Shown here one piece after another: positions 29,581 through 52,950 of a stretch of 64,000 nucleotides of DNA. The stretch covers positions 184,836 through 248,835 of IMG/VR virus record IMGVR_UViG_3300035703_000005. One strand, 5' to 3'. Numbering within the stretch: the first letter of the stretch is position 1; every line of letters begins with the position of its first letter. Below the pieces are notes generated by a model. That model searched no databases. It was not told the DNA's origin and worked only from the letters and a program-made list of their open reading frames with translations. Made by a program: the position numbers and the translations under genes.

Positions 29581-29654
29581 CCTCTCAACATGGCTAAGAT
29601 ACCCCATCTGGCTACCCCATGGCATCATCTGTGGCCAGTTATTAAGCTGTCCAC
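29581..29654 (-). promoter_or_regulatory. early promoter cassette (TATCTT -10, AGCCATGTTGAGAG leader, two-box operator)
   Basis: + strand CCTCTCAACATGGCTAAGATAC ... GTGGCCAG-N8-CTGTCCAC. Confidence 0.75.
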
Positions 29655-31606: not shown

Positions 31607-31671
31607 GTGGCTAAGATACCAGGCCCAGAGTCCCCTCGGCGTGATCAGTGGACAGCCAGTGAACTGGCACA
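31607..31671 (-). promoter_or_regulatory. class A early promoter cassette
   Basis: -10 TATCTT 31618-31613; CGCCGA at -35; GTGGACAG-N8-CTGGCACA 31648-31671. Confidence 0.8.
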
Positions 31672-31680
31672 TTGCTACTC

Positions 31681-31701
31681 AAAAGGGGGCGAAGTGCCCC
31701 C
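31681..31701 (-). terminator. intrinsic terminator between cassettes
   Basis: GGGGGC/GCCCCC stem, TTTT on minus strand, directly upstream of the operator. Confidence 0.65.
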
Positions 31702-31713
31702 TAGTGTGCTCAA

Positions 31714-31881
31714 TCAGAACTCAATCGGTTCAAGAGTTGCTACACCGAGAACGCTCTCAATCATCGGGGATTCGGCATAAGTGTGCCCGACAGAATCAGC
31801 GGCCAGAGTGTCAAGCACTTGCAGCATTTGATTGCCGTTTTGAGCAACGCGAAGCATACCGATTGCGGTTTCTTTGGTCAT
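31714..31881 (-). CDS. small early protein
   Basis: MTKETAIGMLRVAQNGNQMLQVLD... Confidence 0.6.
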   Translation of the reverse strand: MTKETAIGMLRVAQNGNQMLQVLDTLAADSVGHTYAESPMIESVLGVATLEPIEF

Positions 31882-31963
31882 GATAAAAGGAAAAAAGTGT
31901 AGGGCAATTTGAGTGTCTTTAGAGCGCATCTCATTCTCATTCGCTATTCGCAAATGGCGAATG

Positions 31964-32173
31964 TTACTGAACTTCCTCTAGCAAATTGTTCAGGTATTCT
32001 TCATCATAAAGCTCTGCAATCTCTGTTTTAATTTCATCCTCACTCATGCCATCTAGATTGTCACAAATGGTGTCAACAGCAAACTGACACAAATCGCGGA
32101 CATCCATGCCATCAACAACATCAGTGGCATAAAGTTCAATCAGTTTGGAAAGCTGTTCTTTGGAAAGTGTCAT
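31964..32173 (-). CDS. small acidic early protein
   Basis: 69 aa, LIELYATDVVDGMDVRDLCQFA. Confidence 0.65.
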   Translation of the reverse strand: MTLSKEQLSKLIELYATDVVDGMDVRDLCQFAVDTICDNLDGMSEDEIKTEIAELYDEEYLNNLLEEVQ

Positions 32174-32176
32174 GAT

Positions 32177-32347
32177 TCAGATGGTAGCTGGGGACAGGGA
32201 AACTTCAACTCGCTTCAGATTCAATCCAGCAAGTTGCTCATTCACACGCTTGCAGATTGCATCAGTCGGGTTCTTTAGCTTGGACTTCTCATACCAAATG
32301 GTACGGCAGCCGTCGTTGGTTTCTACTTGGATTCGGATGGTTTGCAT
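32177..32347 (-). CDS. small early protein
   Basis: Hand-translated 56 aa MQTIRIQVETNDGCRTIWYEKSK... Confidence 0.55.
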   Translation of the reverse strand: MQTIRIQVETNDGCRTIWYEKSKLKNPTDAICKRVNEQLAGLNLKRVEVSLSPATI

Positions 32348-32371
32348 CACTTTGCGTTGCAGTAGTTAGGA

Positions 32372-32539
32372 TCAGTCAAAAACAACAGGCTTGAAGTCAT
32401 CCGCATAACAATTAGCAAAAGCTGATGCGATGGTGACACAATCAAAGACACCAAGTTGCTCACCGTTGCGAACAGCAACCCACATAGGCTTGCGGGTCTC
32501 AAGATCAGCGCAGGGAAGAAAGTTGGTTGCGTTGGTCAT
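32372..32539 (-). CDS. small early protein
   Basis: First gene after a class A promoter; MTNATNFLPCAD... Confidence 0.6.
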   Translation of the reverse strand: MTNATNFLPCADLETRKPMWVAVRNGEQLGVFDCVTIASAFANCYADDFKPVVFD

Positions 32540-32548
32540 TTGCGTTTG

Positions 32549-32619
32549 TCTCAACATGGCTAAGATACCAGAACTGGCTGGTCGTGGCGCGATCAGTGGA
32601 CAGCCGCTCAACTGTCACA
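32549..32619 (-). promoter_or_regulatory. class A early promoter cassette
   Basis: TCTCAACATGGCTAAGATACC ... GTGGACAG-CCGCTCAA-CTGTCACA. Confidence 0.8.
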
Positions 32620-32800
32620 CTCATAATCATAAGGCACAAGCTCTCTCGGTACGATTAACTGATTGTTGATCGAAAACTCATCCAAAAGATAATCAACTGT
32701 CATCTCCATTTGAGCAGCGTACCACTCAAACATCAGGTAAGTTTCCAATGGAATCTCGTAGCCTTCAGTTTCAACAATGGTGGGTTCTTTAGCCATGATT

Positions 32801-32961
32801 TTACCAGTTAATGAGAGTAGCTGTGTTACCAAGTTTGTTCTGCTCATCCACGATTTCCATAGCATGAACATAAGTTTTGACAGTGACATAACGGGCTTTG
32901 CCTTTAGTCTCAGGGAACAAGCCGAGTCGGTCAATGATGCGAACAGTATTAGAATGTTTCA
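32801..32961 (-). CDS. small early protein
   Basis: MKHSNTVRIIDRLGLFPETKGKARYVTVKTY...; start approximate. Confidence 0.55.
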
Positions 32962-33239
32962 TCTTTGTTTTCCTCAAGAGTGAAATCAGACTCGATACAA
33001 TCATACCAAGTCACCAAATCATAGTCTGGTTCCTGCATCCATTCTTCAGCTTCTTCCTTTGTGTTGAATGTCACAGTAGCAACGTTAGTCTCTTTGATGT
33101 GAACAGTGTAAGACATAATCAGTCAGCTGTGGATTGAATGAAGTTAGCAGTGGAGTGCAGAATGCTCCCCGTAGTGTAGCGAACCTGAGGAAAGATCAGG
33201 AACGCTACAATGAAGATCAGGCCGATTGTTTTCATCGTA

Positions 33240-33566
33240 TCAGTTCAGCCGCATCCCAGAGAAGAAAGGAACAGTCACCGAATTGTTGCGATAATCGGAG
33301 AAAGTTACGAACCATTCGCCTTTCTTTTGAAACACATAGTCACCGTTACCATGCTCTTTGAGAATAGCATTCAGACGGGACTTAGTGGTAGCGGTGCGCC
33401 AGCCACCATCAAACAGTTCAATCCAAGTCTCACCGATACGAGCAATCAAGTTACCGTGCAGGTAGACATCAGCAACATTGGTGCAGCTGACAACCTCAGT
33501 GTTGTCCAGCTTGAAGTCCACACCGTTGGTGATGGCTTTGTTCATTTGCTGTTCGATCTTACGCAT
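33240..33566 (-). CDS. conserved phage early protein
   Basis: 108 aa; VYLHGNLIARI..LFDGGWRTATTKSRLNAIL..VFQKKGEWFV, a motif common in phage early regions. Confidence 0.7.
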   Translation of the reverse strand: MRKIEQQMNKAITNGVDFKLDNTEVVSCTNVADVYLHGNLIARIGETWIELFDGGWRTATTKSRLNAILKEHGNGDYVFQKKGEWFVTFSDYRNNSVTVPFFSGMRLN

Positions 33567-33610
33567 GGTTTGTGAAGCGATTGTTTGGTGGGGGGTCTCG
33601 TTTCCCCCCG

Positions 33611-33677
33611 ATGTGGCTAAGATACCAGGCCCAGAGGCCCCTCGGCGGGATTGGTGGACAGCCCGCAGATTGGCACA
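33611..33677 (-). promoter_or_regulatory. class A early promoter cassette
   Basis: Near-identical to the 31607-31671 copy (ATGTGGCTAAGATACCAGGCCCAGAG..CCCTCGGCG..GTGGACAG). Confidence 0.8.
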
Positions 33678-33848
33678 CAGGCCCCGATTCGGCAGGATCC
33701 GACCCATACCCTGGCTGTCGCAAGTCGGAAGCGGTGAGACTCATTGCAGGCACTAGGGCAGAAACCGGAAAAAGCGTTGATTCTGGCCGCCAGGTAGGTT
33801 GGATCATCCCATGCAGCCAGAATCAGCGGGATCTGAGTTTGTGTTAGT

Positions 33849-34043
33849 TTAGAGTCCAGCTGGTTCGATGCAGTAATAGACTCGATCACCATTTGTGCTC
33901 AGTCCATGCACCCATTGGCCGCCATGTTCGATACAACTTTGGTGGTCAACTTGAATGCTGTGAACATAAAGAATGATGACACCAATGACCAACAAAATGA
34001 TCATCAAGAGTTGAAAGCCTGACACCCAATCATCATTAGTCAT
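33849..34043 (-). CDS. small membrane protein, pilin-like C-x3-GG-x-W family
   Basis: 64 aa; SGFQLLMIILL hydrophobic helix then CIEHGGQWVHG..YYC. Confidence 0.6.
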   Translation of the reverse strand: MTNDDWVSGFQLLMIILLVIGVIILYVHSIQVDHQSCIEHGGQWVHGLSTNGDRVYYCIEPAGL

Positions 34044-34046
34044 GAC

Positions 34047-34250
34047 TCAAGCCTCCTCGTATTCGTAATCATAAACCCGCATCACATCATCCTCAAGAAG
34101 CTTAAGCGTCCGTTCGGTAATCATGTGCGGTTTGATGTCACCTTGCTTGTTGAACAGCTGAGTAACCCAATAGGAGGCAATTTGCTCATCCCGTTCAGCA
34201 ATCTGTTCAAAGCAATCAGCAATCAGAAGCTCAAGATCGTTGTTGTTCAT
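34047..34250 (-). CDS. small early protein
   Basis: 67-aa ORF tiling the cassette. Confidence 0.55.
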   Translation of the reverse strand: MNNNDLELLIADCFEQIAERDEQIASYWVTQLFNKQGDIKPHMITERTLKLLEDDVMRVYDYEYEEA

Positions 34251-34293
34251 TGTAGGAAAAACGGAGGTTTTGATGTAGTAAATGTGGAGCTAA

Positions 34294-34461
34294 TCAGTCG
34301 GAGAAACCATAAAGATCCCAACCAGGCTCTTCCTCTTCAGTTTCATTCCAATACTGATCATACTCACATTCGCTCATAGCGAAGACCTTAGCCATTTCCT
34401 CGCGGTCAGCATCGGAGATCTCAAAGATTTCAGCGGGAAGGTCAACGATTTCGTTGAACAT
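34294..34461 (-). CDS. small acidic early protein
   Basis: MFNEIVDLPAEIFEISD...; GAGGA SD in the repeat leader. Confidence 0.6.
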   Translation of the reverse strand: MFNEIVDLPAEIFEISDADREEMAKVFAMSECEYDQYWNETEEEEPGWDLYGFSD

Positions 34462-34470
34462 TGGTTTGAT

Positions 34471-34544
34471 TCCTCTCAACATGGCTAAGATACAGGGCCC
34501 CAGCCCCCTTTGGCGGGTTTGGTGGACAGCCGCCCAACTGGCCT
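34471..34544 (-). promoter_or_regulatory. class A early promoter cassette
   Basis: TCCTCTCAACATGGCTAAGATAC ... TTGGCG ... GTGGACAG-N8-CTGGCCT. Confidence 0.8.
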
Positions 34545-34705
34545 ACCAACCGCGATTTGATTGCTCAAACAGCTTACGATCTAGGGCCTCTTCATACTCA
34601 TCGGGAGAGAGATAATCCTCCCAGCAACCTCTATCATCATAGCTGCGGTTGGAGTATTCCCAAGAGTAGGATTGGCCTTCATAAAAGTGCAGAACCATGA
34701 TCGTT

Positions 34706-34906
34706 TCAGAGAGTTTGGAAAGGTTGAGCTTCTTTGATGTCGCTGTTGTAATACTTACGGAAGATTGAGTTAATCGTATCGTACCATGGCTCATTGCCAC
34801 TCGGATACCCGCAATCTGCAGCCTGTTGAAGAAACTTAAGGATGCAAGTTTCCTCGTCTTGAGTGAACTTAACTCGGTTCAATGTGTAGCCGGTAGTCAT
34901 AATCAA
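34706..34906 (-). CDS. small early protein
   Basis: 66 aa, YTLNRVKFTQDEETCIL. Confidence 0.55.
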   Translation of the reverse strand: MIMTTGYTLNRVKFTQDEETCILKFLQQAADCGYPSGNEPWYDTINSIFRKYYNSDIKEAQPFQTL

Positions 34907-35181
34907 ACCAGTTGAAGTTGGGGTGCAGGTTGAACACTAAAAGTACCAAGCCGATCGCAAGAGATGCTCACTGCGTTTGCAGGTGCTCCCAGTTCATCAA
35001 CAACATCCCAGAAATCTTCTCCTTCTTCAATGACAACATAACCGAACACACCGGCGATGGGCATAGATTGAATGCCCCATCGTTCGGCTGAGCGTTGGGT
35101 ATCCCACCAAGTACGCTCATTCCAGAACATGTTAGGCTCATCATTGCGAGGGCCAAAAGTGATGCAGATAAACTTGCTCAT
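34903..35181 (-). CDS. small early protein
   Basis: MSKFICITFGPRNDEPNMFWNERTWWD...; first gene of the cassette. Confidence 0.6.
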   Translation of the reverse strand: MSKFICITFGPRNDEPNMFWNERTWWDTQRSAERWGIQSMPIAGVFGYVVIEEGEDFWDVVDELGAPANAVSISCDRLGTFSVQPAPQLQLV

Positions 35182-35190
35182 GGGTGTTTG

Positions 35191-35261
35191 TCTCAACATG
35201 GCTAAGATACAGGATCTGGCTGGGTTTGGCGGGATCAGTGGACAGCCCACCAACTGGCACA
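35191..35261 (-). promoter_or_regulatory. class A early promoter cassette
   Basis: TCTCAACATGGCTAAGATAC ... GTGGACAG-CCCACCAA-CTGGCACA. Confidence 0.8.
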
Positions 35262-35264
35262 TTG

Positions 35265-35654
35265 CTACACCATTGTCAGGCCATAATCGTTAAGCATAAT
35301 GTCACGAACATGCTCACGATCAAAGCTGTCACCAGTAAAGTCAGCTCCAGAGCTGATGTATTTCTGTGTAGCTTCCATCACCATGTCTCGGGTAGCTCCG
35401 ATCTTGTAGATACCATCATCCCCATAAAATGCGAGAACATAATCATAAAACTCTTCCATAGGCTTCTGAAGTTGTTTTACAATACGATTCAGATCATCAA
35501 TAGCACCATTCATTGCAGCTCGTGAGTAACCAGTAGCAAATGGGTAGGTCTTTTCATGATCATCTGAGCTTTCATCCACACCATAACAAACATTCACAGC
35601 TTCGGTGAGATTGTTAATCACTCGGAGCAAAGTGTCATCAATGTTGTAAGTCAT
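35265..35654 (-). CDS. early protein
   Basis: 129 aa; YPFATGYSRAAM and DFTGDSFDREHVRD segments; may be a fusion of two small modules. Confidence 0.65.
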   Translation of the reverse strand: MTYNIDDTLLRVINNLTEAVNVCYGVDESSDDHEKTYPFATGYSRAAMNGAIDDLNRIVKQLQKPMEEFYDYVLAFYGDDGIYKIGATRDMVMEATQKYISSGADFTGDSFDREHVRDIMLNDYGLTMV

Positions 35655-35857
35655 CAGATCACACCTTCAGCGATTTGATTCATCACATCCTGAGCATACT
35701 TCATGAACCGATAAGCTGTAACCTCATCATAAGTAACACCATCAAGCACATCTGAGCCCATGTAAGTATCAACAATCAACTTACATGCGTCGTAGAGAGC
35801 AGCGGTGTGTTCGTACTTTGAGTGAAATTGCATAGCGTTGTAAGTAGGCATTGTCAT
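35654..35857 (-). CDS. small early protein
   Basis: 67 aa, overlapping stop/start. Confidence 0.6.
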   Translation of the reverse strand: MTMPTYNAMQFHSKYEHTAALYDACKLIVDTYMGSDVLDGVTYDEVTAYRFMKYAQDVMNQIAEGVI

Positions 35858-36096
35858 CAGAAGTGTGCCTCAGAGTAGTCAAGTTGTGCAGAGTATTCTG
35901 CAATTTTGTTGTAGCACTTCTCACGAGTTTGTTCATCAGCACCCTCCATGAATGAGAAACAATACTTCATCCGTTGCTCAGGATGTGAGAGCACACGAGC
36001 AATCTCAGCTTGACGCTTCTGGTATGCAGCATTGTATGCGAACATCTCGCGGTCTTCAATGCTCATTGTGTGATACTTGCGTTGCATTGGATTCAT
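35857..36096 (-). CDS. small early protein
   Basis: 79 aa, first gene of the cassette. Confidence 0.6.
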   Translation of the reverse strand: MNPMQRKYHTMSIEDREMFAYNAAYQKRQAEIARVLSHPEQRMKYCFSFMEGADEQTREKCYNKIAEYSAQLDYSEAHF

Positions 36097-36169
36097 CTCT
36101 CAACATGGCCAAGATACCACCGCCAAGGCCCTCTCGGCGGATTTGGTGTGCAGCCCACCGATTGTCACA
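36097..36169 (-). promoter_or_regulatory. class A early promoter cassette
   Basis: CTCTCAACATGGCCAAGATACC ... TCGGCG ... GTGTGCAG-N8-TTGTCACA. Confidence 0.8.
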
Positions 36170-36333
36170 CCAGTTCCTTTAATTGCTCTTTGGAACAGAA
36201 CTTATAGGTATAACCTGGATAGAACTTGTTGACGAGATGGGGAACACCATAACGACCCAATTGGCCGTTTCCGTTATAGTTGACCCACACAACTTTGGTG
36301 GACTCTTCTACAAAATGTTCGTAGGGAAATGCT

Positions 36334-36891
36334 TTAGTCATCGGAAGAATAGTGAAATGCTCTGTTTTGTTTGTGTTTTGTTTGAGTTTGTTTAGAACTT
36401 GGCTTCTTACCGGATCTTACCTTACCTGCGGTAGTTTGTCCAATAGATTGATCTGGATTGTTACCGGCTTTGGCTTTACCGATCTTGAAAGAATCTCCTT
36501 TTTCTGATGTAGGATGAAGTTCAGCTTCTTGACCTTTTCTTTGAGTGATGACACTATGTTGTGCTTCACCAGAAGGGCCTTTTTTCTTACCAATGTTTCT
36601 CACCATTCTCTCAAAGCCTTTCCTAGATTGTTTCTTCGGATTCCTTGAGAGTTGGTATGCAACTTCGGTCTCGGGCTTTCCTTCACCTTTCTCGTCATAA
36701 GATCCAACGACTTTGCTGAATCCAACACCTTTTCTTCTGAGTTTCTTTTCAAGCGATTTTCTCTCACTACGATTCTCTTTTTCTGACTGAGATCCACGAT
36801 CACGAGATACCATTGCGGTGTCTCTTTCTCTCGTGTTTCTAATCATTTTATTGAGAGTAGCTTCATGCAAAAATTGCTTGAAAGTTTTCAT
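36334..36891 (-). CDS. putative internal head protein (capsid-targeting N-terminus), basic
   Basis: 185 aa; MKTFKQFLHE-A resembles the T4 internal-protein targeting sequence MKTYQEFIAE; CTAAATA late-type promoter at 36918-36912. Confidence 0.6.
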   Translation of the reverse strand: MKTFKQFLHEATLNKMIRNTRERDTAMVSRDRGSQSEKENRSERKSLEKKLRRKGVGFSKVVGSYDEKGEGKPETEVAYQLSRNPKKQSRKGFERMVRNIGKKKGPSGEAQHSVITQRKGQEAELHPTSEKGDSFKIGKAKAGNNPDQSIGQTTAGKVRSGKKPSSKQTQTKHKQNRAFHYSSDD

Positions 36892-37067
36892 GTCTAATCT
36901 AATTTTTTAAGTATTTAGATTAGTGTCGGTTTAGGTTGGAAAGCTGTCGTTCAATCTCTATCTTCATGGGCATCAGATGTGATACCATGAAGTGTTCATA
37001 CTCATTCTCTTTCATCAGGTTGCTGATGTTTTCAATCTGCAACAATGCGAGAATGAACTTAGTTTTC

Positions 37068-37274
37068 TCATCCATAGCTTCGGTCAAATCGGTGTTTGCA
37101 ATCAGGACACATAAAGTAAGCAGTTCGGTCTAGATCACGATCATAACATGCAATCACCCGACTGTAAAAGTATGGGGGAGAATAATTCTCCCACCGATCT
37201 TCTGGGATCAATGAATCAACCCAGTTTGCATCACATTCTGGGCAATTTTCTAGTTTGGTTACATCAGGTTTCAT
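37068..37274 (-). CDS. small Zn-ribbon protein
   Basis: 68 aa with CPEC ... CPDC. Confidence 0.6.
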   Translation of the reverse strand: MKPDVTKLENCPECDANWVDSLIPEDRWENYSPPYFYSRVIACYDRDLDRTAYFMCPDCKHRFDRSYG

Positions 37275-37669
37275 CGTTGATACAGATAACTACCGAAAGG
37301 ATCACACTTACTATAACACAATTCCCGAGAATTATCATCCAGAAGATTGTACCTCACACCCTTAGCTGGAGACTTCCAGGATGCAGACTTGTAGACATCG
37401 CCAGTGGATTTATCAATGAAACAATGCACCGAGCGACTGATACCATCCTTCTGAATCAGTTTGTAATACTTACGGCCTTCCTCCAGATAATACTCATGAT
37501 TCACACCTTTTTCTTTAATCTCTTCAATTTTGTTGATGTGATAATCTACATTCTCACCCCTAGCTGCTGCAGATTCATGCAGTCGCAGAAACCAAGCTTT
37601 CATGGACAGGTAGAGTGCGTCACACAACATGACACTATAATGTTGAACTTTAGAGTCGTTCATTTTCAC
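37271..37669 (-). CDS. conserved T4-like phage early protein
   Basis: 132 aa; GRKYYKLIQ..SRSVHCFIDKSTGDVYKSASWKSPAKGVRYNL. Confidence 0.7.
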   Translation of the reverse strand: MKMNDSKVQHYSVMLCDALYLSMKAWFLRLHESAAARGENVDYHINKIEEIKEKGVNHEYYLEEGRKYYKLIQKDGISRSVHCFIDKSTGDVYKSASWKSPAKGVRYNLLDDNSRELCYSKCDPFGSYLYQR

Positions 37670-37944
37670 AGAAGATGATAAATTAGTGGTTCAAGTGCAT
37701 CAACAGGTTGACCTGTTCTCTTCAACATGTAGTAACCTTGTAACATTTTAAGGTCACTACCTTTCTTGGGTATTTTACCCTTTGGTGGTGGAAGTGGATC
37801 ACCAAACTTTCTGGGTTTCCCAGGCTTTCTCTTCCACCACTTTTTTTCTTCCTCTAATTCACGAGGAAGTGTAACTGACCAACTCCGAACTTTATGCGTG
37901 AAGTTCATAATTTCAGTTGATGATTGTGTCAGTTTCAGGATCAA
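37666..37944 (-). CDS. small basic early protein
   Basis: WWKRKPGKPRKFG..GYYMLK; start uncertain. Confidence 0.5.
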   Translation of the reverse strand: MILKLTQSSTEIMNFTHKVRSWSVTLPRELEEEKKWWKRKPGKPRKFGDPLPPPKGKIPKKGSDLKMLQGYYMLKRTGQPVDALEPLIYHLL

Positions 37945-38125
37945 ATGTTACCTCAGTGATAACATCAAACTCATCAGTCATTTTCACATAATTCCATTCA
38001 CCTTCATCCTCACCTTCTTGGTAACAATGAATGAAACCTTCTGCGTCTTGTTTGACAAAACAACCATCATAGTTGTCTTCATCAAACACATAACCAGATG
38101 CAATCAATGCGTCAACGAAAGTCAT
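37913..38125 (-). CDS. small acidic early protein
   Basis: 70 aa, first gene after the promoter at 38141. Confidence 0.65.
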   Translation of the reverse strand: MTFVDALIASGYVFDEDNYDGCFVKQDAEGFIHCYQEGEDEGEWNYVKMTDEFDVITEVTFDPETDTIIN

Positions 38126-38140
38126 GGGAGTTGTGTGTTT

Positions 38141-38213
38141 CTCTCAACATAGCTAAGATACATCGTATCAGCGCCCAGTGGGGGGATTAGTGTGCGGTTC
38201 GCGGATTGGCACA
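38141..38213 (-). promoter_or_regulatory. class A early promoter cassette
   Basis: CTCTCAACATAGCTAAGATAC ... GTGTGCGG-N8-TTGGCACA. Confidence 0.75.
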
Positions 38214-38850
38214 AGGGGGCTGGGTTTGGGGGCGATCATACCAACCCCCAGTGAGTCCCGATCCCGTCTCAGTGAGATCCCTGTTGTGGCAATGGGTTTG
38301 AGTTTGAGCAAACTTTGATTTTTCTGCAATTTTACCCCAGTAGGGGATTGGTTCATCCATTGCAATCAGATTCATCAAAAATGAATTGTTGTAACTAATT
38401 GACTCAATCTTTCTTCTGCATCTCTTCAATGTCCTTCAACATTTCATCCAGACGCTTAGCACTTCGGGCATTCATAATGATGTCTGCAACACAATAGCCA
38501 AACGAGAAAAAGGCAGCAAATGCAAGAATAGCTGAAAACATAATTAACCTCCTACGGATTGAATAGTAATAACATCTAAAGTTTCCTGAGTTAGATTAAC
38601 TTCCTCAGGTTCATTTGTCTCCTCTAGATAAGCACTGAGAAGATCATAAATCAAACTCATTTGCTCATTGGTGAACAGGTATTGTTGTTCAGGGTGAAGA
38701 ATAGAAACATTCATATCAGTGCATTTTGTCCGATGACATGTTGAACCTTTCTCACTGCCATACGAAAGTTTGTAAAGTCCATTGTTTCGTCTTCTTCACA
38801 GAAATCTTCAAAGATCTTTTTAATTTGTTCTTCTGTAATTTGTGGGTCAA

Positions 38851-39081
38851 TCATTTCAGAACATGCACAAAGTCAAGGGAAAATACACACCAACCAGTGA
38901 GATCTGTCACATGTTCAACTAGACATTGTGCGATGGATTCGTCATCATCGTCGTCATCAACTTCCACTTCATAAGTGTTGCCAACGACAGAATCAATGAC
39001 GGATTGTTGTTCTTCTAGAGTGAAATCTTCATCATCAAAATCAAATGAAGCTTCAGTGACGTGGAGTAAAAGAGTTTTCAT
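38851..39081 (-). CDS. small acidic early protein
   Basis: 76 aa, VTEASFDFDD..LVEHVTDLTGWCV. Confidence 0.65.
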   Translation of the reverse strand: MKTLLLHVTEASFDFDDEDFTLEEQQSVIDSVVGNTYEVEVDDDDDDESIAQCLVEHVTDLTGWCVFSLDFVHVLK

Positions 39082-39244
39082 CAGACTTCATCCCTCATTT
39101 CAGAAAGTTTTTCATAAAGATCACGACATTGACCAACATCAAGACCAGTGATGTTACACATTTCACCCCAGTTTTCATTGAACTGATGTTCAACGATTGC
39201 CAGAATGGCATCCAATTCTTCAAATGTGAGAGTAGTTTGTGTCA

Positions 39245-39409
39245 TCAGTAGTTAGAAACAGTGGTGAAGATGATACCAGTTTCGTTGTAGCGAAGGTCAA
39301 CATCACACTGGTATTCCTCGCTCAAATTGTATGCGAGGTCATAAGCTTTGTCCATGTCAGTGGTAGTGTTCTCCCAAGGAGCTCCGTAACACTTAACATC
39401 AATTCGCAT
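39245..39409 (-). CDS. small early protein
   Basis: MRIDVKCYGAPWENTTTDMDKAYDLAYNLSEEY. Confidence 0.65.
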   Translation of the reverse strand: MRIDVKCYGAPWENTTTDMDKAYDLAYNLSEEYQCDVDLRYNETGIIFTTVSNY

Positions 39410-39420
39410 GGGGTGGATTC

Positions 39421-39493
39421 CTCTCAACATGGCCAAGATACCCGATCTGAGCCCCCAGTGGCGGGTCTGGTGTCCAGCCCGCCAACTGGCACA
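39421..39493 (-). promoter_or_regulatory. class A early promoter cassette
   Basis: CTCTCAACATGGCCAAGATACC ... GTGGCG ... GTGTCCAG-N8-CTGGCACA. Confidence 0.8.
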
Positions 39494-39498
39494 CTAGA

Positions 39499-39714
39499 TC
39501 ATTTGCTGCTCCGAGAACCACCGAATAACATGCCAATGAGCAACACAATCACAACATTCTGCCAGAATGCCAGACTAACTCCAAACCAACCCAGAACAAC
39601 ACCAAGCAACCAAGCTTGGAATGAAATAATACCACCAACTAGAAGAATGATAAGAGCAACAAGAGCAAGCAACTGCACTGCAGTCAGATCAAACTTTGTG
39701 TACCTTTTAGCCAT
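39499..39714 (-). CDS. small membrane protein (paralog of 50077-50265)
   Basis: AWLLGVVLGWFGVSLAFWQN, hydrophobic. Confidence 0.65.
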   Translation of the reverse strand: MAKRYTKFDLTAVQLLALVALIILLVGGIISFQAWLLGVVLGWFGVSLAFWQNVVIVLLIGMLFGGSRSSK

Positions 39715-39763
39715 GATAAAATGCCTCGTGAGAAAAAAGAATAGTAAGAGTATAGGTTATTAT

Positions 39764-39997
39764 TTAGCCTCCGAACAATTCATCAAACAGATTATCCATT
39801 TCCATCATTTCGTTCTGACGATCAATCTGATTACGCATCTCAACATAATACTGTTGTTCCATCTTGAGCTTCAGCAACTGATCACCAATCTCGTGCAGTT
39901 TGTTGTTAATTTCAATCCGATCCATTCCGTTCACCGTAGTAACGGTGATTGGCATACCTTGTGACATCGTGGTGCGTTCGGAGATTGTGTGAGTCAT
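39764..39997 (-). CDS. small coiled-coil early protein
   Basis: MTHTISERTTMSQGMP..DRIEINNKLHEIGDQLLKLK. Confidence 0.6.
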   Translation of the reverse strand: MTHTISERTTMSQGMPITVTTVNGMDRIEINNKLHEIGDQLLKLKMEQQYYVEMRNQIDRQNEMMEMDNLFDELFGG

Positions 39998-40004
39998 GGG
40001 GAAA

Positions 40005-40077
40005 CCTCTCAACATGGCTAGAATACATTGCCTGGCGTCCTCTGGCGAGTCACTAGGCCGGTTCCGGAACTGTCACA
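40005..40077 (-). promoter_or_regulatory. class A early promoter cassette
   Basis: CCTCTCAACATGGCTAGAATAC ... CTGGCG ... CCGGTTCCGGAACTGTCACA. Confidence 0.75.
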
Positions 40078-40330
40078 CTGTCTCCAATTCGGCGGCGATG
40101 GCGATGAGCTTGTGGCGGATGTTTTGCTTTGCGTTCCAACTCGGCCACGGATCGTTAACAGAGGCAAACGGCAACTCAGGTGGCTCTGGTTCAACCGGCA
40201 CTACCTGATCAGCAACAGCACGGATAGCAGCGCCAGCAAATCCTCGCGCCACTAGACGAAAAGGAGAGTCTGTATCAGGGCAACCACAGGCGGCAAGTAT
40301 TGCCTGAGCGGCAGGAGAAAGATCAGTCAT
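40073..40330 (-). CDS. small early protein
   Basis: 85 aa, MTDLSPAAQAIL..AAIRAVADQVVP..LIAIAAELE. Confidence 0.65.
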   Translation of the reverse strand: MTDLSPAAQAILAACGCPDTDSPFRLVARGFAGAAIRAVADQVVPVEPEPPELPFASVNDPWPSWNAKQNIRHKLIAIAAELETV

Positions 40331-40333
40331 CGG

Positions 40334-40543
40334 TCAGGGTGTCACAGTCTCTTTAAGTTGCTCTGCAGGATAGTTAAAAAGTTTATTAATCCTTTCAACT
40401 TCACTCTCAAAAAACTCCATTGCTTCCAAAGGTTCAATGTCATAAGTGTCAGCAAGTTCATCAAGTTTCCACCGCAGATCATCCATCTCCCAAAGTTGAG
40501 TGAGAATGAATAAACGAACTTCGTGCTTTTGTGTGTTTTTCAT
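40334..40543 (-). CDS. small early protein
   Basis: 69 aa, overlapping start/stop. Confidence 0.55.
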   Translation of the reverse strand: MKNTQKHEVRLFILTQLWEMDDLRWKLDELADTYDIEPLEAMEFFESEVERINKLFNYPAEQLKETVTP

Positions 40544-40755
40544 TTCAAATGGGGTGCAATTTGCGTTTGAAGTTTCAGTTGTTGAAGCAAAATACGGGCA
40601 AACTCTACTTCACCATAATCGGCACCATCGTCAAAGGCATCATCATAAGATCCATTGTCACTTGGAGAGTAATAATCACCATCCTCACAATGCTTACGAT
40701 CTGCAGTTTCTTGGAGTTTGGAGAGAAGGAATTGCAGTTTTTCGGTGTCAGTCAT
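40540..40755 (-). CDS. small early protein (paralog of 56207-56434)
   Basis: GSYDDAFDDGADYGEVEFAR. Confidence 0.65.
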   Translation of the reverse strand: MTDTEKLQFLLSKLQETADRKHCEDGDYYSPSDNGSYDDAFDDGADYGEVEFARILLQQLKLQTQIAPHLK

Positions 40756-40774
40756 CGGCGGTGTCCTTTGTTGT

Positions 40775-40841
40775 TGAAACTACTATAAGGGGTCACGGTC
40801 GGGTCTGTGGAGGATTTTGTACCAGTTCCGGAACTGTCACA
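40775..40841 (-). promoter_or_regulatory. early promoter cassette
   Basis: -10 TATAGT 40787-40782; box GTACCAGTTCCGGAACTGTCACA 40819-40841. Confidence 0.7.
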
Positions 40842-40844
40842 GTA

Positions 40845-41744
40845 TCACTTGACCCATTCTTTTTTCATGGTGAAGTTTGCATAACTGAACTGAAGACGAT
40901 TTACAAGTTTGAAAGTACCAAACCTGTTGGTCATTACATAACCTTCATGATCGCACTTTTCATCACCAAGATAACAAGATACTTCCTCAACGGAAGTGAT
41001 ACCTTCCATCAGAAGCTCTTTGATCTCAATGATGAGTTTGTAGAGAATCATCAGGTTGTTATCCATACCCGATTCTGCAATGTCGCGTTGTTCGCGGATG
41101 CACTTGTTCACAGCTACTTTGAGTTCTTGTCCTTCTTTTTGCGAAGGGAACTTAACAAAATTGATAGCCACACTTGCAAGACCAAGAAGCAAATCAATTC
41201 TACGACGACGGGAGGTAAAGTGTGCATCAGTTTTCAGGAACTTAACATTAGGAGATTGCAGTTCCTCATCAACACCGAACGATGCAACTGCGTCTTTCAG
41301 ATGAGTAGAACTGGTGTAGGAAGTGTGTGCAGCAATGATCACATTCTCATTCACAATGCGATCAAAGATGTATTCAATGGTGTTGGGCTTGTAGAAGTCG
41401 TTACCACCGAAACCGATGAAATCACCCTGCACAATACCTTTGATGCGAGGGAGATTGTCGAAACAAACATGCAGAATCGACGCAACATTTCCGTCATGAT
41501 TGACAGAAATGTCATAGTGAGAATAATTGATCTTGATTTTCTTCTTGTTGAATACACTTTTCGTACCAACAAAAAACCTACCCGTAAAAGGACAAGTGCC
41601 CCACACAACAGCTGGAGCCCCATCATACTTGACGGAGAGTTCGCTGTTGCGTTCCCGCAGGAATCGCAGGACATTCTTTGCACCATCCCGACCATCGTTC
41701 AGGATCGCGTCCTCTGGGTGTTCTAGGTGAAGATTCTTTTTCAT
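40845..41744 (-). CDS. ATP-dependent ligase/nucleotidyltransferase-like protein (leaderless)
   Basis: HLEHPED N-terminus, SVKYDGAP (KxDG motif I), VQGDF, HEGYV, FKLV; start at the ATG 7 nt after TATGAT. Confidence 0.6.
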   Translation of the reverse strand: MKKNLHLEHPEDAILNDGRDGAKNVLRFLRERNSELSVKYDGAPAVVWGTCPFTGRFFVGTKSVFNKKKIKINYSHYDISVNHDGNVASILHVCFDNLPRIKGIVQGDFIGFGGNDFYKPNTIEYIFDRIVNENVIIAAHTSYTSSTHLKDAVASFGVDEELQSPNVKFLKTDAHFTSRRRRIDLLLGLASVAINFVKFPSQKEGQELKVAVNKCIREQRDIAESGMDNNLMILYKLIIEIKELLMEGITSVEEVSCYLGDEKCDHEGYVMTNRFGTFKLVNRLQFSYANFTMKKEWVK

Positions 41745-41809
41745 GAGGCCATCATACATGAAAAAAGGGCCCTGTAAAGGGCCCCCGAACCAGTTCGCAA
41801 ACTGTCACA
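41745..41809 (-). promoter_or_regulatory. early promoter cassette with stem-loop
   Basis: -10 TATGAT 41756-41751; GGGCCC-N6-GGGCCC hairpin; box ACCAGTTCGCAAACTGTCACA. Confidence 0.7.
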
Positions 41810-41919
41810 CGAACTCAGCGATGTAGTAACCAATCGTTACATTGTATTGTTGTGCCTTTTGTTCCCATTCTTGCCATTCTTCATCATCAGCAAGACACTC
41901 AAGCAAAAGCAGTTGATCT

Positions 41920-42102
41920 TCAGTCATTCTCAGTCACATTTGTGTTAGGTTTATCAAGATAATCAATAACTTTTTTCAATTCATCAACCTTAGTTCCGGA
42001 TGGATTGTCAATGATTTCGCTCATAAGAACTTTCATTGCTTCCATCTTTTGTTGATGTAAACGTTGTAATTGTTCTGGATCGTGAAAGTTTGGGTCAATC
42101 AT
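41920..42102 (-). CDS. small early protein
   Basis: 60-aa ORF. Confidence 0.5.
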   Translation of the reverse strand: MIDPNFHDPEQLQRLHQQKMEAMKVLMSEIIDNPSGTKVDELKKVIDYLDKPNTNVTEND

Positions 42103-42294
42103 TGTAACGATAAACTCTAAATTATGTATCAGGTCTAAATCCTGGTTCTAATCCATTTACCATCGAATAAGGATAAAGTTTTCTTAGGATTGTATCACAT
42201 TTCCAGTATTCTTTACTGTCAATGACGGTTTTATTGATTTGATAATGTTTTACAGCTTGATAGAGTGTTGTACACTCATCCCCATTAAAGTCCA

Positions 42295-42528
42295 TCAAGT
42301 TGTAAAACTATCAACAACACGAGAAGGCTCTTCATCTACAAGAGCAAACTTATGTGCATTTACTACACGTTCCATGATGCGAGAATCATGAGCATTTTCA
42401 TACTCATCACGCCATTCTAGAAGAACATCGTGGCACTCATTATCATTCTCTGCGATGACACTTACGACGCCACCATACTCAGAGGAAGGAAACGGAACCC
42501 AATAATCAACAAGATAAAGATACTTCAT
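42295..42528 (-). CDS. conserved cyanophage small protein
   Basis: 77 aa, YLYLVDYWVPFPSSEYGGVVSVIAEND. Confidence 0.7.
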   Translation of the reverse strand: MKYLYLVDYWVPFPSSEYGGVVSVIAENDNECHDVLLEWRDEYENAHDSRIMERVVNAHKFALVDEEPSRVVDSFTT

Positions 42529-42583
42529 TTTCAGTGTTAAACTACTCCTTTAGTGTAAATGTTTTGTTTGGATTTGTCAAGAG

Positions 42584-42979
42584 TCAGAGACAATACTTTT
42601 TGAGGACGCGAAGAACCTCTCTAGGATTGTCTTGAATCGCAAAGGCTTCTTTCTCAATGTCTTTTCTGAATCCAAGAGGTCTGATATGACCATCACCAGA
42701 TTTGCAAATCTGTGCTACATGAACTGACTCGTGTGCAAAAGTTCGGTTAATTTCACTTTGCCAGTCTTCATAGATGTTTTTGGTGGTATCAGTACACATA
42801 GCTAAGATTGTTTTTCCCAGATCATTTTTTCGATCTTTGATTGTGATAGTCCAACCATCCCACTGATTTTTACTTCCACAAATTTTGTGATGTTCAATAA
42901 CAGCTACATTTGCTTGATTAAGAACCTCCAGGATCTCTTGATGTGTTGGCGTAAGATATTGGACAAACTCCATCACCAA
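42584..42979 (-). CDS. HExxH zincin-like protein
   Basis: 131 aa; TFAHESVHVAQ with downstream EKEA. Confidence 0.6.
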   Translation of the reverse strand: MVMEFVQYLTPTHQEILEVLNQANVAVIEHHKICGSKNQWDGWTITIKDRKNDLGKTILAMCTDTTKNIYEDWQSEINRTFAHESVHVAQICKSGDGHIRPLGFRKDIEKEAFAIQDNPREVLRVLKKYCL

Positions 42980-43371
42980 CCCCTGTCACTTAAGAAGCAA
43001 GCCAATTTCCAACCGAACCAACCAATAGCTCCACCAACCAACATTGCACCAATTCCAGAAGGAAGAGTGAACAATCCAAAGAGAATTGCAATAGCAGCAA
43101 TAAAGAAAGCCCCAGCACCAATCATGGTGCTGAAACTATCACCATCTCCACCACTACTAGAATCATTGTTCGATGAACCAGAACTATACGATTCTTGAGG
43201 TTCAGAGTATTCTTTTTTCTCAAAAACAGGGCTAACACAGAACGCATTGAAGCCTTCAATGTGTGCATACATTGATTCAACTTGTTCTTTGGCTTGCATA
43301 GGGCCAAGAGCATCAACTGTAGTTGATCGAATACCTTGACGAGGAGAAGTCCAGTCTACTTTGTATTTCAT
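42973..43371 (-). CDS. membrane-anchored early protein
   Basis: 132 aa; soluble N-terminus, Ser/Gly linker, C-terminal hydrophobic hairpin. Confidence 0.65.
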   Translation of the reverse strand: MKYKVDWTSPRQGIRSTTVDALGPMQAKEQVESMYAHIEGFNAFCVSPVFEKKEYSEPQESYSSGSSNNDSSSGGDGDSFSTMIGAGAFFIAAIAILFGLFTLPSGIGAMLVGGAIGWFGWKLACFLSDRGW

Positions 43372-43553
43372 GGGTTGAAGTAAATACGGTGATGTGAAAT
43401 AAACAGATAATCTTCAGGATCTTTTTCATCTACCACGATTTCGTGATAGATTGACATTGCATCTTTTTCCCGACCATCAGATGCAAGATCAGAACACCTT
43501 GATTCATGATAATTCTCAAGGTTTCTAATAAGTTGTTTGTATTTTTTACTCAT
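43368..43553 (-). CDS. small early protein
   Basis: 61 aa, overlapping start/stop. Confidence 0.55.
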   Translation of the reverse strand: MSKKYKQLIRNLENYHESRCSDLASDGREKDAMSIYHEIVVDEKDPEDYLFISHHRIYFNP

Positions 43554-43834
43554 CCAAATGCAGCCTCAAGTGGGTTAATTTTAAGTGGCATAGCCGTATA
43601 GGGAGTTGTATTATTCAATTCTACTACACTTCCCACTGTCTTACTATTGATTGGGGCATAAAATTGCCTTGTCTTTGTATTGTAAAAGCCCCAGATGGTT
43701 TTAACTGGTTTCCCAAGGTTGTAATCATACTGTTTGTGATGACGCAACCAGATAGCAGTAACATTACGCTTAAAATCCTTTTCTTGTTCGTAAGAATAAC
43801 CATCGGGAGCTTTGTGGAATAGTTCAACCGTCAC
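43550..43834 (-). CDS. conserved cyanophage early protein
   Basis: 94 aa, HKAPDGYSYE..FKRNVTAIWL..TIWGFYN..PINSKTVG. Confidence 0.7.
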   Translation of the reverse strand: MTVELFHKAPDGYSYEQEKDFKRNVTAIWLRHHKQYDYNLGKPVKTIWGFYNTKTRQFYAPINSKTVGSVVELNNTTPYTAMPLKINPLEAAFG

Positions 43835-44043
43835 TTCTCAATCTTCCAGTGTTCGTTACCTTTTTTCGGAACCCAAAAACAGTACATTCCATTCATAGAA
43901 ACCAGAAAAAGATGATCAACACCATCAATCACTTTTTCTTGTTCTACAGTACACATGTGGAACTGATCCATAATGTTATGGAATCGGTTCTTAGCTTTAC
44001 TGGACAGAGGAACAACGGAAACCCGTTTTGTTTTAGTAGTCAT
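43831..44043 (-). CDS. small early protein
   Basis: VVPLSSKAKNRFHNIMDQFHMCTVEQ..YCFWVP; start approximate. Confidence 0.65.
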   Translation of the reverse strand: MTTKTKRVSVVPLSSKAKNRFHNIMDQFHMCTVEQEKVIDGVDHLFLVSMNGMYCFWVPKKGNEHWKIEK

Positions 44044-44052
44044 AGTCTTTAC

Positions 44053-44121
44053 CAACATGGCTAACTTAATGCGTCAAGCAGTGGATTTGTGGATTTGGTG
44101 GACGGTTTGGGCTTTGTCACA
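44053..44121 (-). promoter_or_regulatory. class A early promoter cassette (variant)
   Basis: AACATGGCTAACTTA ... GTGGACGG-N8-TTGTCACA. Confidence 0.7.
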
Positions 44122-50787: not shown

Positions 50788-50805
50788 GTGTCTTGATTGA
50801 TTACT

Positions 50806-52921: not shown

Positions 52922-52950
52922 TGTAATTAGGTGTTTATGAGAGTATTATA

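What the first reader, a model, noticed from the sequence alone, without database searches (positions are those of the whole stretch)
31607..44121. Class A promoters replace the -35 with a conserved CGCCRN element and carry the operator in inverted orientation
Seen: in the copies from 31.6 to 44.1 kb the -10 is mostly TATCTT/TATTCT, and the hexamer 16-17 nt upstream is usually CGCCGA/CGCCAC/CGCCAA/CGCCAG rather than TTGACA. The box reads GGACAG-N8-CTGGCACA on the + (template) strand. In class B (50.8-63.7 kb; mostly TATAAT; hairpin at -35) the same asymmetric box reads on the minus (sense) strand. The 29631 and 50846 copies are hybrids. Established: T4 middle promoters keep the sigma70 -10 but swap the -35 for a MotA box. 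Inference: two temporal or host-range promoter classes using one dimeric activator, with class A needing a remodelled sigma region 4. No MotA/AsiA equivalent is visible in this window.
Basis: partly seen in the sequence, partly recalled or inferred. Interest (0 to 1): 0.7.

Follow-up and report, generated by a model that had tools for sequence, protein, structure and literature searches.

The report
Two cyanophage promoter cassette families
The repeats are two sequence families of the same kind of gene-start cassette found throughout T4-like cyanophages, each with a 24-base two-fold-symmetric upstream site and a normal -10 box; the "flipped operator" is real, but it is a variant of a widespread design, not a separate mechanism.

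Summary
The window is the last 64 kb of a 248.8-kb freshwater T4-like cyanomyovirus, with all genes on the minus strand.

**Class A (29.6-40.1 kb), ten cassettes**
- The -10 is TATCTT or TATTCT.
- CGCCRN sits 16-17 nt upstream of it.
- The box reads GGACAG-N8-CTGGCACA on the + strand.

**Class B (53-63.7 kb), seven cassettes**
- The -10 is TATAAT.
- A stem-loop covers the -35 region.
- The box is on the sense strand.

**What the box is**
- It is a 24-bp quasi-palindrome, TGTGNCAGT-N6-ACTGNCACA, with one strong and one weak half.
- Its dyad sits near -53.5 in both classes.
- The strong half is distal in A and proximal in B.

**How common both designs are**
- A box followed by 28-31 nt and a -10 is found in S-PM2, P-SSM2, P-HM2, B3 and Syn9.
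- Both cores occur in many IMG/VR contigs.
- Syn9 uses the A orientation, and B3 uses both.
- The parts recombine freely between copies: orientation, -35 filling, stem-loop and -10 type.

**Interpretation**
- The likely mechanism is one -35-independent promoter design driven by a dimeric box binder.
- The cassettes resemble PeSL elements.
- Nothing supports sigma remodelling or separate timing for the two classes. Timing could not be tested.
- MotA and AsiA are absent from the whole genome.

This is a new variant of a known kind and of moderate interest.

The parts
29583..29652 (-). Hybrid cassette: B-orientation box (29631-29652, GGACAG..CTGGCCAC on the sense strand), TGCCAT at the -35 position, class A -10 TATCTT (29596-29601) and leader AGCCATGTTGAGAGGAA
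   Evidence: the same hybrid type recurs in at least 10 unique IMG/VR cassettes
31600..31671 (-). Class A cassette: box 31650-31671, CGCCGA, -10 TATCTT 31613-31618
32549..32619 (-). Class A cassette: box 32598-32619, CGCCAC, -10 TATCTT 32562-32567
33606..33677 (-). Class A cassette: box 33656-33677, CGCCGA, -10 TATCTT 33619-33624
34474..34545 (-). Class A cassette: box 34524-34545, CGCCAA, -10 TATCTT 34487-34492
35191..35261 (-). Class A cassette: box 35240-35261, CGCCAA, -10 TATCTT 35204-35209
36098..36169 (-). Class A cassette missed by the 22-mer search: box about 36148-36169 (TGTGACAAT..CTGCAC), CGCCGA, -10 TATCTT 36111-36116
38142..38213 (-). Class A cassette missed by the 22-mer search: box about 38192-38213, CCCCAC at the -35 position, -10 TATCTT 38155-38160
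39422..39493 (-). Class A cassette: box 39472-39493, CGCCAC, -10 TATCTT 39435-39440. The spacer TTGGCGGG can pair with CCCGCCA
40007..40077 (-). Class A cassette: box 40056-40077, CGCCAG, -10 TATTCT 40020-40025
40782..40841 (-). Promoter with a nearly perfect palindromic box (TGTGACAGTTCCGGAACTGGTACA), TCCACA at -35 and -10 TATAGT
41751..41809 (-). Hybrid: A-orientation box, GC hairpin with T-run (41765-41786), -10 TATGAT; lies upstream of the DUF6267 gene
44055..44121 (-). Degenerate class A copy: box 44100-44121 (3 mismatches), no CGCC, TTAAGT in place of the -10, leader TAGCCATGTTGG
50800..50867 (-). Hybrid or degenerate copy: B-orientation GGACAC, proximal AACTGTCCAC, CGCCAC, weak -10, AGCCA leader
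53240..53312 (-). Class B cassette: box 53291-53312, stem-loop with T5, CTCCAT, -10 TATAAT 53255-53260
56927..56998 (-). Class B cassette: box 56977-56998, CTCCAT, -10 TATAAT 56942-56947
57932..58003 (-). Class B cassette: box 57982-58003, 9-bp stem-loop with T-run, CTCCAC, -10 TATAAT 57947-57952
58514..58585 (-). Class B cassette: box 58564-58585, stem-loop without T-run, -10 TATGAT 58529-58534
60016..60088 (-). Class B cassette: box 60067-60088, stem-loop, TTGAAA-17-TATAAT (60031-60036)
63290..63362 (-). Class B cassette: box 63341-63362, stem-loop, TTGAAA-17-TATAAT (63305-63310)
63655..63727 (-). Class B cassette: box 63706-63727, stem-loop, TTGAAA-17-TATAAT (63670-63675)
52930..52950 (-). 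Class B -10 and leader core (TATAATACTCTCATAA) with no box upstream

Best explanation
Classes A and B are two sequence families of one kind of intergenic regulatory cassette. The cassettes sit in the hyperplastic region of small ORFs of a freshwater T4-like cyanomyovirus (family Kyanoviridae).

**Anatomy of each cassette (shown)**
1. A 24-bp quasi-palindromic box, TGTGNCAGT-N6-ACTGNCACA, with its dyad near -53.5.
2. Variable filling at the -35 position:
   - CGCCRN in class A;
   - TCCACA or TTGAAA inside a stem-loop, often a terminator, in class B.
3. A sigma70-family -10 of the form TAnnnT: TATCTT in A, TATAAT in B.
4. A family-specific conserved leader, then a Shine-Dalgarno sequence and ATG.

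**How it works (inferred)**
- Host RNA polymerase uses the -10.
- It is recruited or stabilised by a dimeric protein bound to the box. That protein is either of the host or brought in by the virion.
- The -35 hexamer is therefore dispensable and free to vary.
- A near-symmetric site bound by a dimer works in either orientation. The flip between A and B only changes which half-site is strong and does not signal a different mechanism.

**Origin of the two families (inferred)**
- They are lineage "dialects" kept alike within each family by common descent and recombination, as with the PeSL cassettes of other T4-like phages.
- Class A fills the GC-richest block of the genome. That block is shared with many freshwater metagenomic phage contigs.
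For: **Identity of the genome**
- Pfam finds gp6, gp8 and a giant baseplate protein.
- blastn hits only Synechococcus phages.
- The source runs are freshwater or lake metagenomes.

**Cassettes are real and multi-copy:**

**Same dyad position, strong half-site on opposite sides**
| Set | Distal half (matches of 8) | Proximal half (matches of 8) | Copies with the named bias |
|---|---|---|---|
| Class A | 7.4 | 4.7 | 34 of 42 distal stronger |
| Class B | 4.5 | 7.5 | 96 of 103 proximal stronger |

- The centre mode is -53.5 in both.
- Some boxes match on both strands: window 40818, and B3 at 115173 and 90466.

**The design is family-wide**
- The 22-mer occurs 15 times forward and 7 reverse in S-PM2, against 0 and 1 for the control.
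- It also occurs in Syn9, P-HM2, P-SSM2 and B3.
- CTGNCACA-N28-31-TANNAT occurs 46 times in five cultured phages against 2 in controls.
- The class A core is in 74 IMG/VR stretches and the class B core in at least 120.

**Parts mix freely**
- Syn9 has A-orientation boxes before gp55, gp63, gp68 and gp75, with TATTCT or TATAGT; the gp63 copy also has TTGAAA.
- B3 has both orientations.
- Hybrids occur in the window.
- Class-A-rich contigs also hold class B cores.

**Other support**
- An RNA-level role for the box is unlikely, because the two classes present opposite strands in the transcript.
- The class A block has 42-45% GC against 35.2% for the genome. It is syntenic at 72-92% identity with many contigs, with modules present or absent.
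- Comeau et al. 2014 describe PeSLs as composite terminator/promoter cassettes in hyperplastic regions, with variants that carry a Mot box (PMC4122927).
- T4-like cyanophages are reported to lack motA, asiA and T4-type middle promoters (PMC5780444; PMC2984593).
Against: - No transcription start, timing or binding data exist for this phage. Promoter function is inferred from position, the -10 match and conservation alone.
- The RNA runs gave only low-depth contigs of relatives.
- No binder is identified.
- The palindrome is not enriched in small, picocyanobacterium-sized genomes: about 49 matches against about 64 control matches in about 205 genomes. A host regulon that uses it is therefore not evident.
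- A dyad at -53.5 is not a classical class I or class II activator position.
- Whole cassettes are conserved over about 75 nt, including the leader. Conservation of any single element, CGCC included, may reflect shared descent and not selection.
- CGCC is class-specific (53% of class A against 1% of class B). A class-specific contact cannot be excluded.
Confidence: 0.6

Rival explanations
1. A and B are two temporal or host-range promoter classes served by one dimeric activator, and class A (CGCCRN, flipped box) also needs a remodelled sigma region 4, in the manner of T4 MotA/AsiA.
For: - CGCC is specific to class A: 53% against 1%, and 8 matches against 0.01 expected in the window.
- Class A lies further from TTGACA than class B (14% against 42% reach 4/6).
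- The two classes are clustered in separate blocks.
- Both classes coexist in several phage genomes, which fits a division of labour.
Against: - No MotCF or AsiA is present in the genome.
- Nothing sits at -30 that resembles a Mot box.
- Orientation, -35 filling and -10 type are uncoupled in Syn9, in B3 and in the hybrids.
- Syn9 uses the A orientation throughout its small-ORF region.
- Extended -10 promoters and activator-dependent promoters need no sigma remodelling (established knowledge).
Confidence: 0.12
2. The box is an operator for a phage-encoded early protein that shuts these promoters off, or retunes them, at the early-to-middle switch. Initial firing relies on the -10, partly an extended -10, alone.
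For: - The palindrome is not enriched in picocyanobacterium-sized genomes. This favours a phage-encoded binder, which could not be present at time zero unless it is packaged.
- In class A, T at -15 (58%), G at -14 (66%) and G at -13 (95%) resemble an extended -10.
Against: - A site centred at -53 does not overlap the polymerase footprint the way typical repressor sites do.
- The fixed distance to the -10 in more than 140 cassettes suggests a stereospecific contact with polymerase, as expected of an activator.
Confidence: 0.12
3. The cassettes are mainly recombination modules, in the manner of PeSLs. Their sequence is conserved by gene conversion and spread, and the box has no dedicated protein partner.
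For: - Whole-cassette conservation includes the spacer and the leader.
- Modules are present or absent among syntenic contigs.
- Variant joints lie near cassettes in metagenomic contigs.
- There is a published PeSL precedent.
Against: - The box is conserved across genera whose remaining cassette sequence has diverged completely: S-PM2, P-SSM2, P-HM2, Syn9 and B3.
- It keeps its two-fold symmetry and its distance to the -10. Homogenisation within a genome cannot explain that.
Confidence: 0.1
4. The box acts in RNA, as a 3'-UTR or processing signal of the upstream transcript.
For: In class B the box lies just upstream of a terminator-like hairpin, so it would be transcribed.
Against: - Classes A and B place opposite strands in the transcript.
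- The box does not itself fold in class B.
- Rfam finds nothing in the window.
Confidence: 0.03

Closest known systems
PeSL (promoter-early stem-loop) cassettes of T4-like phages (Arbiol et al. 2010, PMC2839356; Comeau et al. 2014, PMC4122927)
   Same: - They are multi-copy, conserved intergenic cassettes in the hyperplastic regions of a T4-like genome.
- Each sits in front of small ORFs and carries a promoter, a Shine-Dalgarno sequence and a start codon.
- Class B also has the stem-loop or terminator next to the promoter.
- Sequence dialects differ between phage lineages, and a published variant (PmSL) replaces the -35 with another element.
- Modules are present or absent between relatives.
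   Different: - PeSLs have a recognisable sigma70 -35. Here it is mostly absent.
- The conserved upstream element is a 24-bp palindrome at about -53, which PeSLs are not described as having.
- Class A has no stem-loop.
- Recombination at the cassettes was not shown here.
Early-gene regulatory element of T4-like cyanophages (Doron et al. 2016, ISME J 10:1437; paper not held, abstract recalled from memory)
   Same: - As I recall the abstract, early genes of Syn9 are controlled by a novel regulatory element that is abundant and conserved among T4-like cyanophages, while host-like promoters drive middle genes.
- The box-plus -10 design found here is present before the small ORFs of Syn9 (gp55, gp63, gp68, gp75) and in four other cultured cyanomyoviruses.
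   Different: - I could not read the paper, so identity with the published motif is unverified.
- To my knowledge, two orientation and -10 dialects within one genome, and the CGCCRN filling, are not described.
T4 middle promoters (MotA box with AsiA sigma appropriation)
   Same: A sigma70-type -10 is kept while the -35 is not used. The setting is a T4-like phage.
   Different: - The Mot box (TGCTT) sits at -30. Here the shared element is a palindrome at about -53.
- There is no MotA or AsiA in the genome.
- Cyanomyoviruses as a group are reported to lack both.
Activator-dependent (-35-less, type 2) cyanobacterial promoters such as NtcA-activated ones
   Same: A palindromic dimer site upstream of a TAnnnT -10 with no usable -35.
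   Different: The NtcA site is GTA-N8-TAC centred at about -41.5 (own knowledge; the motif is cited in PMC3037559). Here the sequence is different, longer, and centred about 12 bp further upstream.

Membership tests
PeSL cassettes of T4-like phages | Multi-copy conserved intergenic element in a hyperplastic region of a T4-like myovirus, directly upstream of ORFs, ending in a Shine-Dalgarno sequence and start codon | tested here: met
PeSL cassettes of T4-like phages | Stem-loop (terminator) joined to the promoter | tested here: inconclusive
   Class B meets it: median z -3.65, and 4 of 7 copies have a T-run. Class A does not: z about 0. In the metagenomic class B set only 47% have z below -2.
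PeSL cassettes of T4-like phages | Sigma70-like -35 and -10 separated by about 17 nt | tested here: not met
   The -10 is present. At least 4/6 matches to TTGACA are reached in 14% of class A and 42% of class B copies. In the window only three class B copies have TTGAAA.
PeSL cassettes of T4-like phages | Indels or gene swaps between close relatives bounded by the cassettes | tested here: inconclusive
   Modules are present or absent among syntenic contigs, and joints lie near cassettes. Breakpoints were not mapped to the cassettes.
T4 MotA-dependent middle promoters | Mot box (a/t)(a/t)(a/t)TGCTTtA centred at about -30 | tested here: not met
   The -35 to -30 hexamers are CGCCRN, CCCCAC, CTCCAY or TTGAAA.
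T4 MotA-dependent middle promoters | Phage encodes MotA and AsiA | tested here: not met
   AsiA has no match. MotCF scores 13.9 bits (cut-off 25) inside a UDP-glucose dehydrogenase gene.
Cyanomyovirus early-promoter element (Doron 2016) | Conserved non-sigma70 element upstream of genes in many T4-like cyanophages, Syn9 included | tested here: met
Cyanomyovirus early-promoter element (Doron 2016) | Same sequence as the published motif, lying upstream of mapped early transcription starts | not testable with these tools
   The paper and its start-site tables are not held. RNA runs were uninformative.
Sigma54 promoters | TGGCAC-N5-TTGC at -24/-12 | tested here: not met
   CTGGCAC lies at about -50 to -43 and is not followed by TTGC at the required spacing. 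Cyanobacteria lack RpoN (own knowledge).
NtcA-type activated promoters | GTA-N8-TAC centred near -41.5 | tested here: not met
   The box sequence and the centre at -53.5 differ.
Extended -10 promoters | TG at -15/-14 | tested here: inconclusive
   In the window, 4 of 10 class A copies have TGG before TATCTT and 4 of 10 have TG directly abutting it. In 64 metagenomic copies T at -15 is 58%, G at -14 is 66% and G at -13 is 95%.

The most novel reading that the evidence does not exclude
All Kyanoviridae share an undescribed activation system that does not depend on the -35.
- A dimeric protein, packaged in the virion or a conserved picocyanobacterial factor, binds a 24-bp palindrome at -53.5 and recruits host RNA polymerase to promoters that have only a -10.
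- The A and B dialects (strong half distal with CGCCRN, or strong half proximal with a stem-loop) are functionally distinct sub-classes. They could differ in timing, in strength, or in read-through from upstream genes.
- This would be the cyanophage counterpart of T4 MotA/AsiA, built on a different principle.
Probability: 0.15. Interest if true: 0.75.

Novelty: new variant of a known kind. Interest (0 to 1): 0.42.

Why it matters
T4-like cyanophages are major killers of marine and freshwater picocyanobacteria. How they launch transcription without the T4 toolkit (Alt, Mod, MotA, AsiA) is still unsettled.

What this analysis adds:
- One palindromic upstream site at a fixed distance from the -10 runs through cultured marine phages and hundreds of metagenomic contigs.
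- It tolerates either orientation and almost any -35 filling.
- That narrows the search to a dimeric box binder.
- It also gives a simple sequence rule for annotating these promoters in metagenomes.

If the two dialects proved to be functionally distinct, one genome would carry two built-in expression programmes. If not, they are a clean example of cassette families spreading through hyperplastic regions.

Tried and rejected
1. **CGCC as the 3' arm of a hairpin pairing with the box spacer (TTGGCGGG with CCCGCCAA).**
   - Across 56 anchored class A cassettes, 57.8% of positions pair, against 55.4 ± 0.9% after permutation (12 of 2000 shuffles reach it).
   - CGCC is conserved whatever the spacer. 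Only one sub-family pairs 8/8.
   - Class A shows no excess folding. Rejected as a general explanation.

2. **A shared CNCCRM hexamer at -35 in both classes.** Only loosely true. GCC[AG] is typical of class A, CCAC(A) of class B, and about 12% of class A copies carry CCCCAC or CCCCAT.

3. **Sigma54 reading of CTGGCAC.** Wrong position, no TTGC.

4. **MotA and AsiA.** Absent. The weak MotCF hit is spurious.

5. **A host regulon using the palindrome.**
   - An exact scan of genome contigs gave hits in scattered taxa.
   - In 401 Cyanobacteriota genomes there is no enrichment in genomes of 2.5 Mb or less. My hand tally is about 49 against about 64 control matches.
   - Genomes of 5 Mb or more are clearly enriched.
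   - This is inconclusive for degenerate sites.

6. **Transcription starts or timing from public RNA runs.** Only low-depth Logan contigs of relatives were found, with no pile-ups of ends.

7. **Rfam and tRNA scans of the window.** Nothing found.

8. **Literature.** Doron 2016 and Mann 2005 are not held. No held paper pairs 'cyanophage' with the box core TGGCAC in a promoter context.

9. **Class A block as a recent foreign insert unique to this phage.** Rejected. The block is syntenic with many metagenomic contigs.

Full report
**What the window is**

The window is bases 184,836-248,835 of a 248,835-bp IMG/VR virus record rated complete.
- ORFs at 9.4-25.7 kb match T4 baseplate proteins gp8 and gp6. 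They flank a 4262-aa protein.
- blastn of 29-36 kb hits only Synechococcus phages.
- The DNA runs that hold the sequence are freshwater, lake and subsurface metagenomes.

It is therefore a freshwater T4-like cyanomyovirus. All genes in the window run on the minus strand. From 64 kb down to 26 kb they are mostly small ORFs, as in a hyperplastic region.

**Checking the observation**

The 22-mer box matches 18 times against 2.4 expected. Profile searches define 10 strong class A copies at 29.6-40.1 kb. They also define 9 class B copies at 53-63.7 kb, with further class B copies across the record ends and near 142 and 145 kb.

Class A:
- The -10 is TATCTT in nine copies and TATTCT in one.
- The hexamer 16-17 nt upstream is CGCCGA, CGCCAA, CGCCAC or CGCCAG in eight copies.
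- CGCC-N18/19-TATYYTRGC occurs 8 times against 0.01 expected.
- No copy has a TTGACA-like -35.

Class B:
- The -10 is TATAAT in 6 of 7 copies.
- The -43..-14 segment forms a stem-loop, with median z of -3.65. Four of seven copies have a T-run. Class A does not fold beyond chance.

The hybrids at 29.6 and 50.85 kb are real. Two more exist at 40.8 and 41.8 kb.

**What the box is**

In phage B3 and in P-SSM2 and P-HM2 the sequence upstream of ACTGGCACA is usually TGTG(A/C)CA(G/C)T. Some sites match the 22-mer on both strands. The box is thus a 24-bp quasi-palindrome, TGTGNCAGT-N6-ACTGNCACA.

I scored both halves in 64 unique class A and 120 unique class B cassettes taken from IMG/VR.

| Class | Distal half (matches of 8) | Proximal half (matches of 8) | Copies with the named bias |
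|---|---|---|---|
| A | 7.4 | 4.7 | 34 of 42 distal stronger |
| B | 4.5 | 7.5 | 96 of 103 proximal stronger |

- The dyad is at -53.5 (mode) in both classes, taking the hexamer as -12 to -7.
What flips is which half of a symmetric site is strong.
- The two weak halves (GGCTGTCCAC and AAGTGTCCT, read from the dyad) are no more alike than either is to the strong half.

**How widespread the design is**

- The 22-mer occurs 15 times forward and 7 reverse in S-PM2, against 0 and 1 for the control. The S-PM2 copies show the class B layout down to the leader.
- CTGNCACA-N28-31-TANNAT occurs 46 times in Syn9, S-PM2, P-SSM2, P-HM2 and B3, against 2 in controls.
- Syn9 carries the A orientation (TGTGNCAS-N8-STGTCCAC) before gp55, gp63, gp68 and gp75. 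The -10 there is TATTCT, TATAGT or similar, and the gp63 copy also has TTGAAA at -35.
- B3 carries both orientations with TATAAT-like -10s.
- Five large class-A-rich contigs also hold class B cores.
- A recurrent metagenomic sub-family joins a B-orientation box to a class A -10, like the 29.6-kb copy.

Orientation, -35 filling, stem-loop and -10 type are therefore interchangeable modules.

**The CGCC element**

- I first thought it was the 3' arm of a hairpin with the box spacer. The test failed: pairing is barely above permuted controls, and CGCC is conserved whatever the spacer.
- CGCC is nevertheless class-specific, at 53% of class A against 1% of class B.
- About 75 nt of each cassette is conserved, including the spacer and the leader. 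I therefore cannot separate selection on CGCC from shared descent.

**Where class A sits**

- The class A block is the GC peak of the genome, at 42-45% against 35.2% overall.
- It is syntenic at 72-92% identity with many metagenomic contigs, which differ in which modules are present.
- The class A core is rare in cultured phages: only S-CAM9 and S-8S53 give partial hits.

**Mechanism**

Shown:
- the anatomy of the cassettes;
- the symmetry of the box;
- its fixed distance to the -10;
- its spread across the virus family;
- the absence of MotA and AsiA.

Inferred:
- A dimer on the box recruits host RNA polymerase to a -10-only promoter.
- The -35 position is therefore free. In class B it is used to house the terminator of the upstream gene.
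- An RNA-level role is unlikely, because the two classes transcribe opposite strands of the box.

Whether the binder is of the host or of the phage is open:
- The palindrome is not enriched in picocyanobacterium-sized genomes.
- It is enriched in large cyanobacterial genomes.

**Comparison with what is known**

- The cassettes behave like the PeSLs of other T4-like phages. They fail the PeSL -35 criterion, and class A also fails the stem-loop criterion.
- They are not MotA-type middle promoters.
- From memory, Doron et al. 2016 reported a novel conserved element controlling early genes of T4-like cyanophages. The Syn9 sites found here are probably that element, but I could not read the paper.
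- The two-dialect arrangement within one genome and the CGCCRN filling appear to be undescribed details.

**Verdict**

This is a real, highly non-random feature. It is a new variant of a known kind. Sigma remodelling and temporal classes are not supported, and timing remains untested.

Noticed in passing
window 29590-29599 and the same place in the other class A cores: An ATG lies 4 nt after the class A -10 (TATCTTAGCCATGTTGAGA). It is in frame with the downstream ORF, which has its own Shine-Dalgarno sequence, in 36 of 55 metagenomic cassettes and in 6 of 8 window copies that share the leader. Chance would give about one third, but many copies are near-duplicates. It could mark a leaderless start or be a relic.
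   Followed up: partly
window 36334-36891 (-): A 185-aa ORF in the class A block has a sub-threshold Pfam match to the S-adenosylmethionine lyase family (25.4 bits, cut-off 28). It may be an anti-restriction early gene.
   Followed up: no
window 29772-29801 (-): A perfect sigma70 consensus, TTGACA-18-TATAAT (12/12), lies about 170 nt upstream of the 29.6-kb hybrid cassette. It is the only canonical promoter in the class A block.
   Followed up: no
L266:3107-3130 and 5191-5214; L317:2708-2731; genomes G277, G315, G355, G287: The same 24-bp palindrome (TGTGACAGTT-N4-AACTGTCACA) is enriched in large cyanobacterial genomes, for example 14 matches against 1 control. It lies about 300 bp upstream of right-handed beta-helix protein genes in Mojavia and Pelatocladus. 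It is also common in Acidobacteria. This suggests an unidentified transcription factor with this specificity.
   Followed up: partly
window 31396-35857: Contigs of the best DNA run and of one RNA run show variant joints near cassettes: 34531 to 35281, 31621 to 32792, 32374 to 32544, and 35857 back to 35188. This hints at gain or loss of modules in the population.
   Followed up: partly
genome 108115-108172 (-), 142127-142194 (-), 145317-145389 (-), 1433-1519 (-), all outside the window: Further cassettes lie outside the hyperplastic block. One is class-A-like: TGTGACAGTT..AAGTGTCCAC, CTCCAA, TATTCT. The others are class-B-like: one precedes a CbbQ/NorQ-type AAA ATPase gene near the gp45 clamp, one precedes a 764-aa ORF, and one lies across the record ends.
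   Followed up: partly
window 1870-23800 (-): There are two giant structural ORFs. One is 4262 aa with a YHYH domain, lying between the gp6-like and gp8-like baseplate genes. The other is 2501 aa with DUF4815.
   Followed up: no
class leaders: window 31600-31612 and equivalents; 53240-53254 and equivalents: The 13-19 nt after the -10 are nearly invariant within each class: AGCCATGTTGAGAGGAA in A and ACTCTCATACACA in B. Class B-type leaders are also seen in S-PM2. This is more conservation than a promoter needs, so it may be a translational or RNA-stability signal.
   Followed up: no
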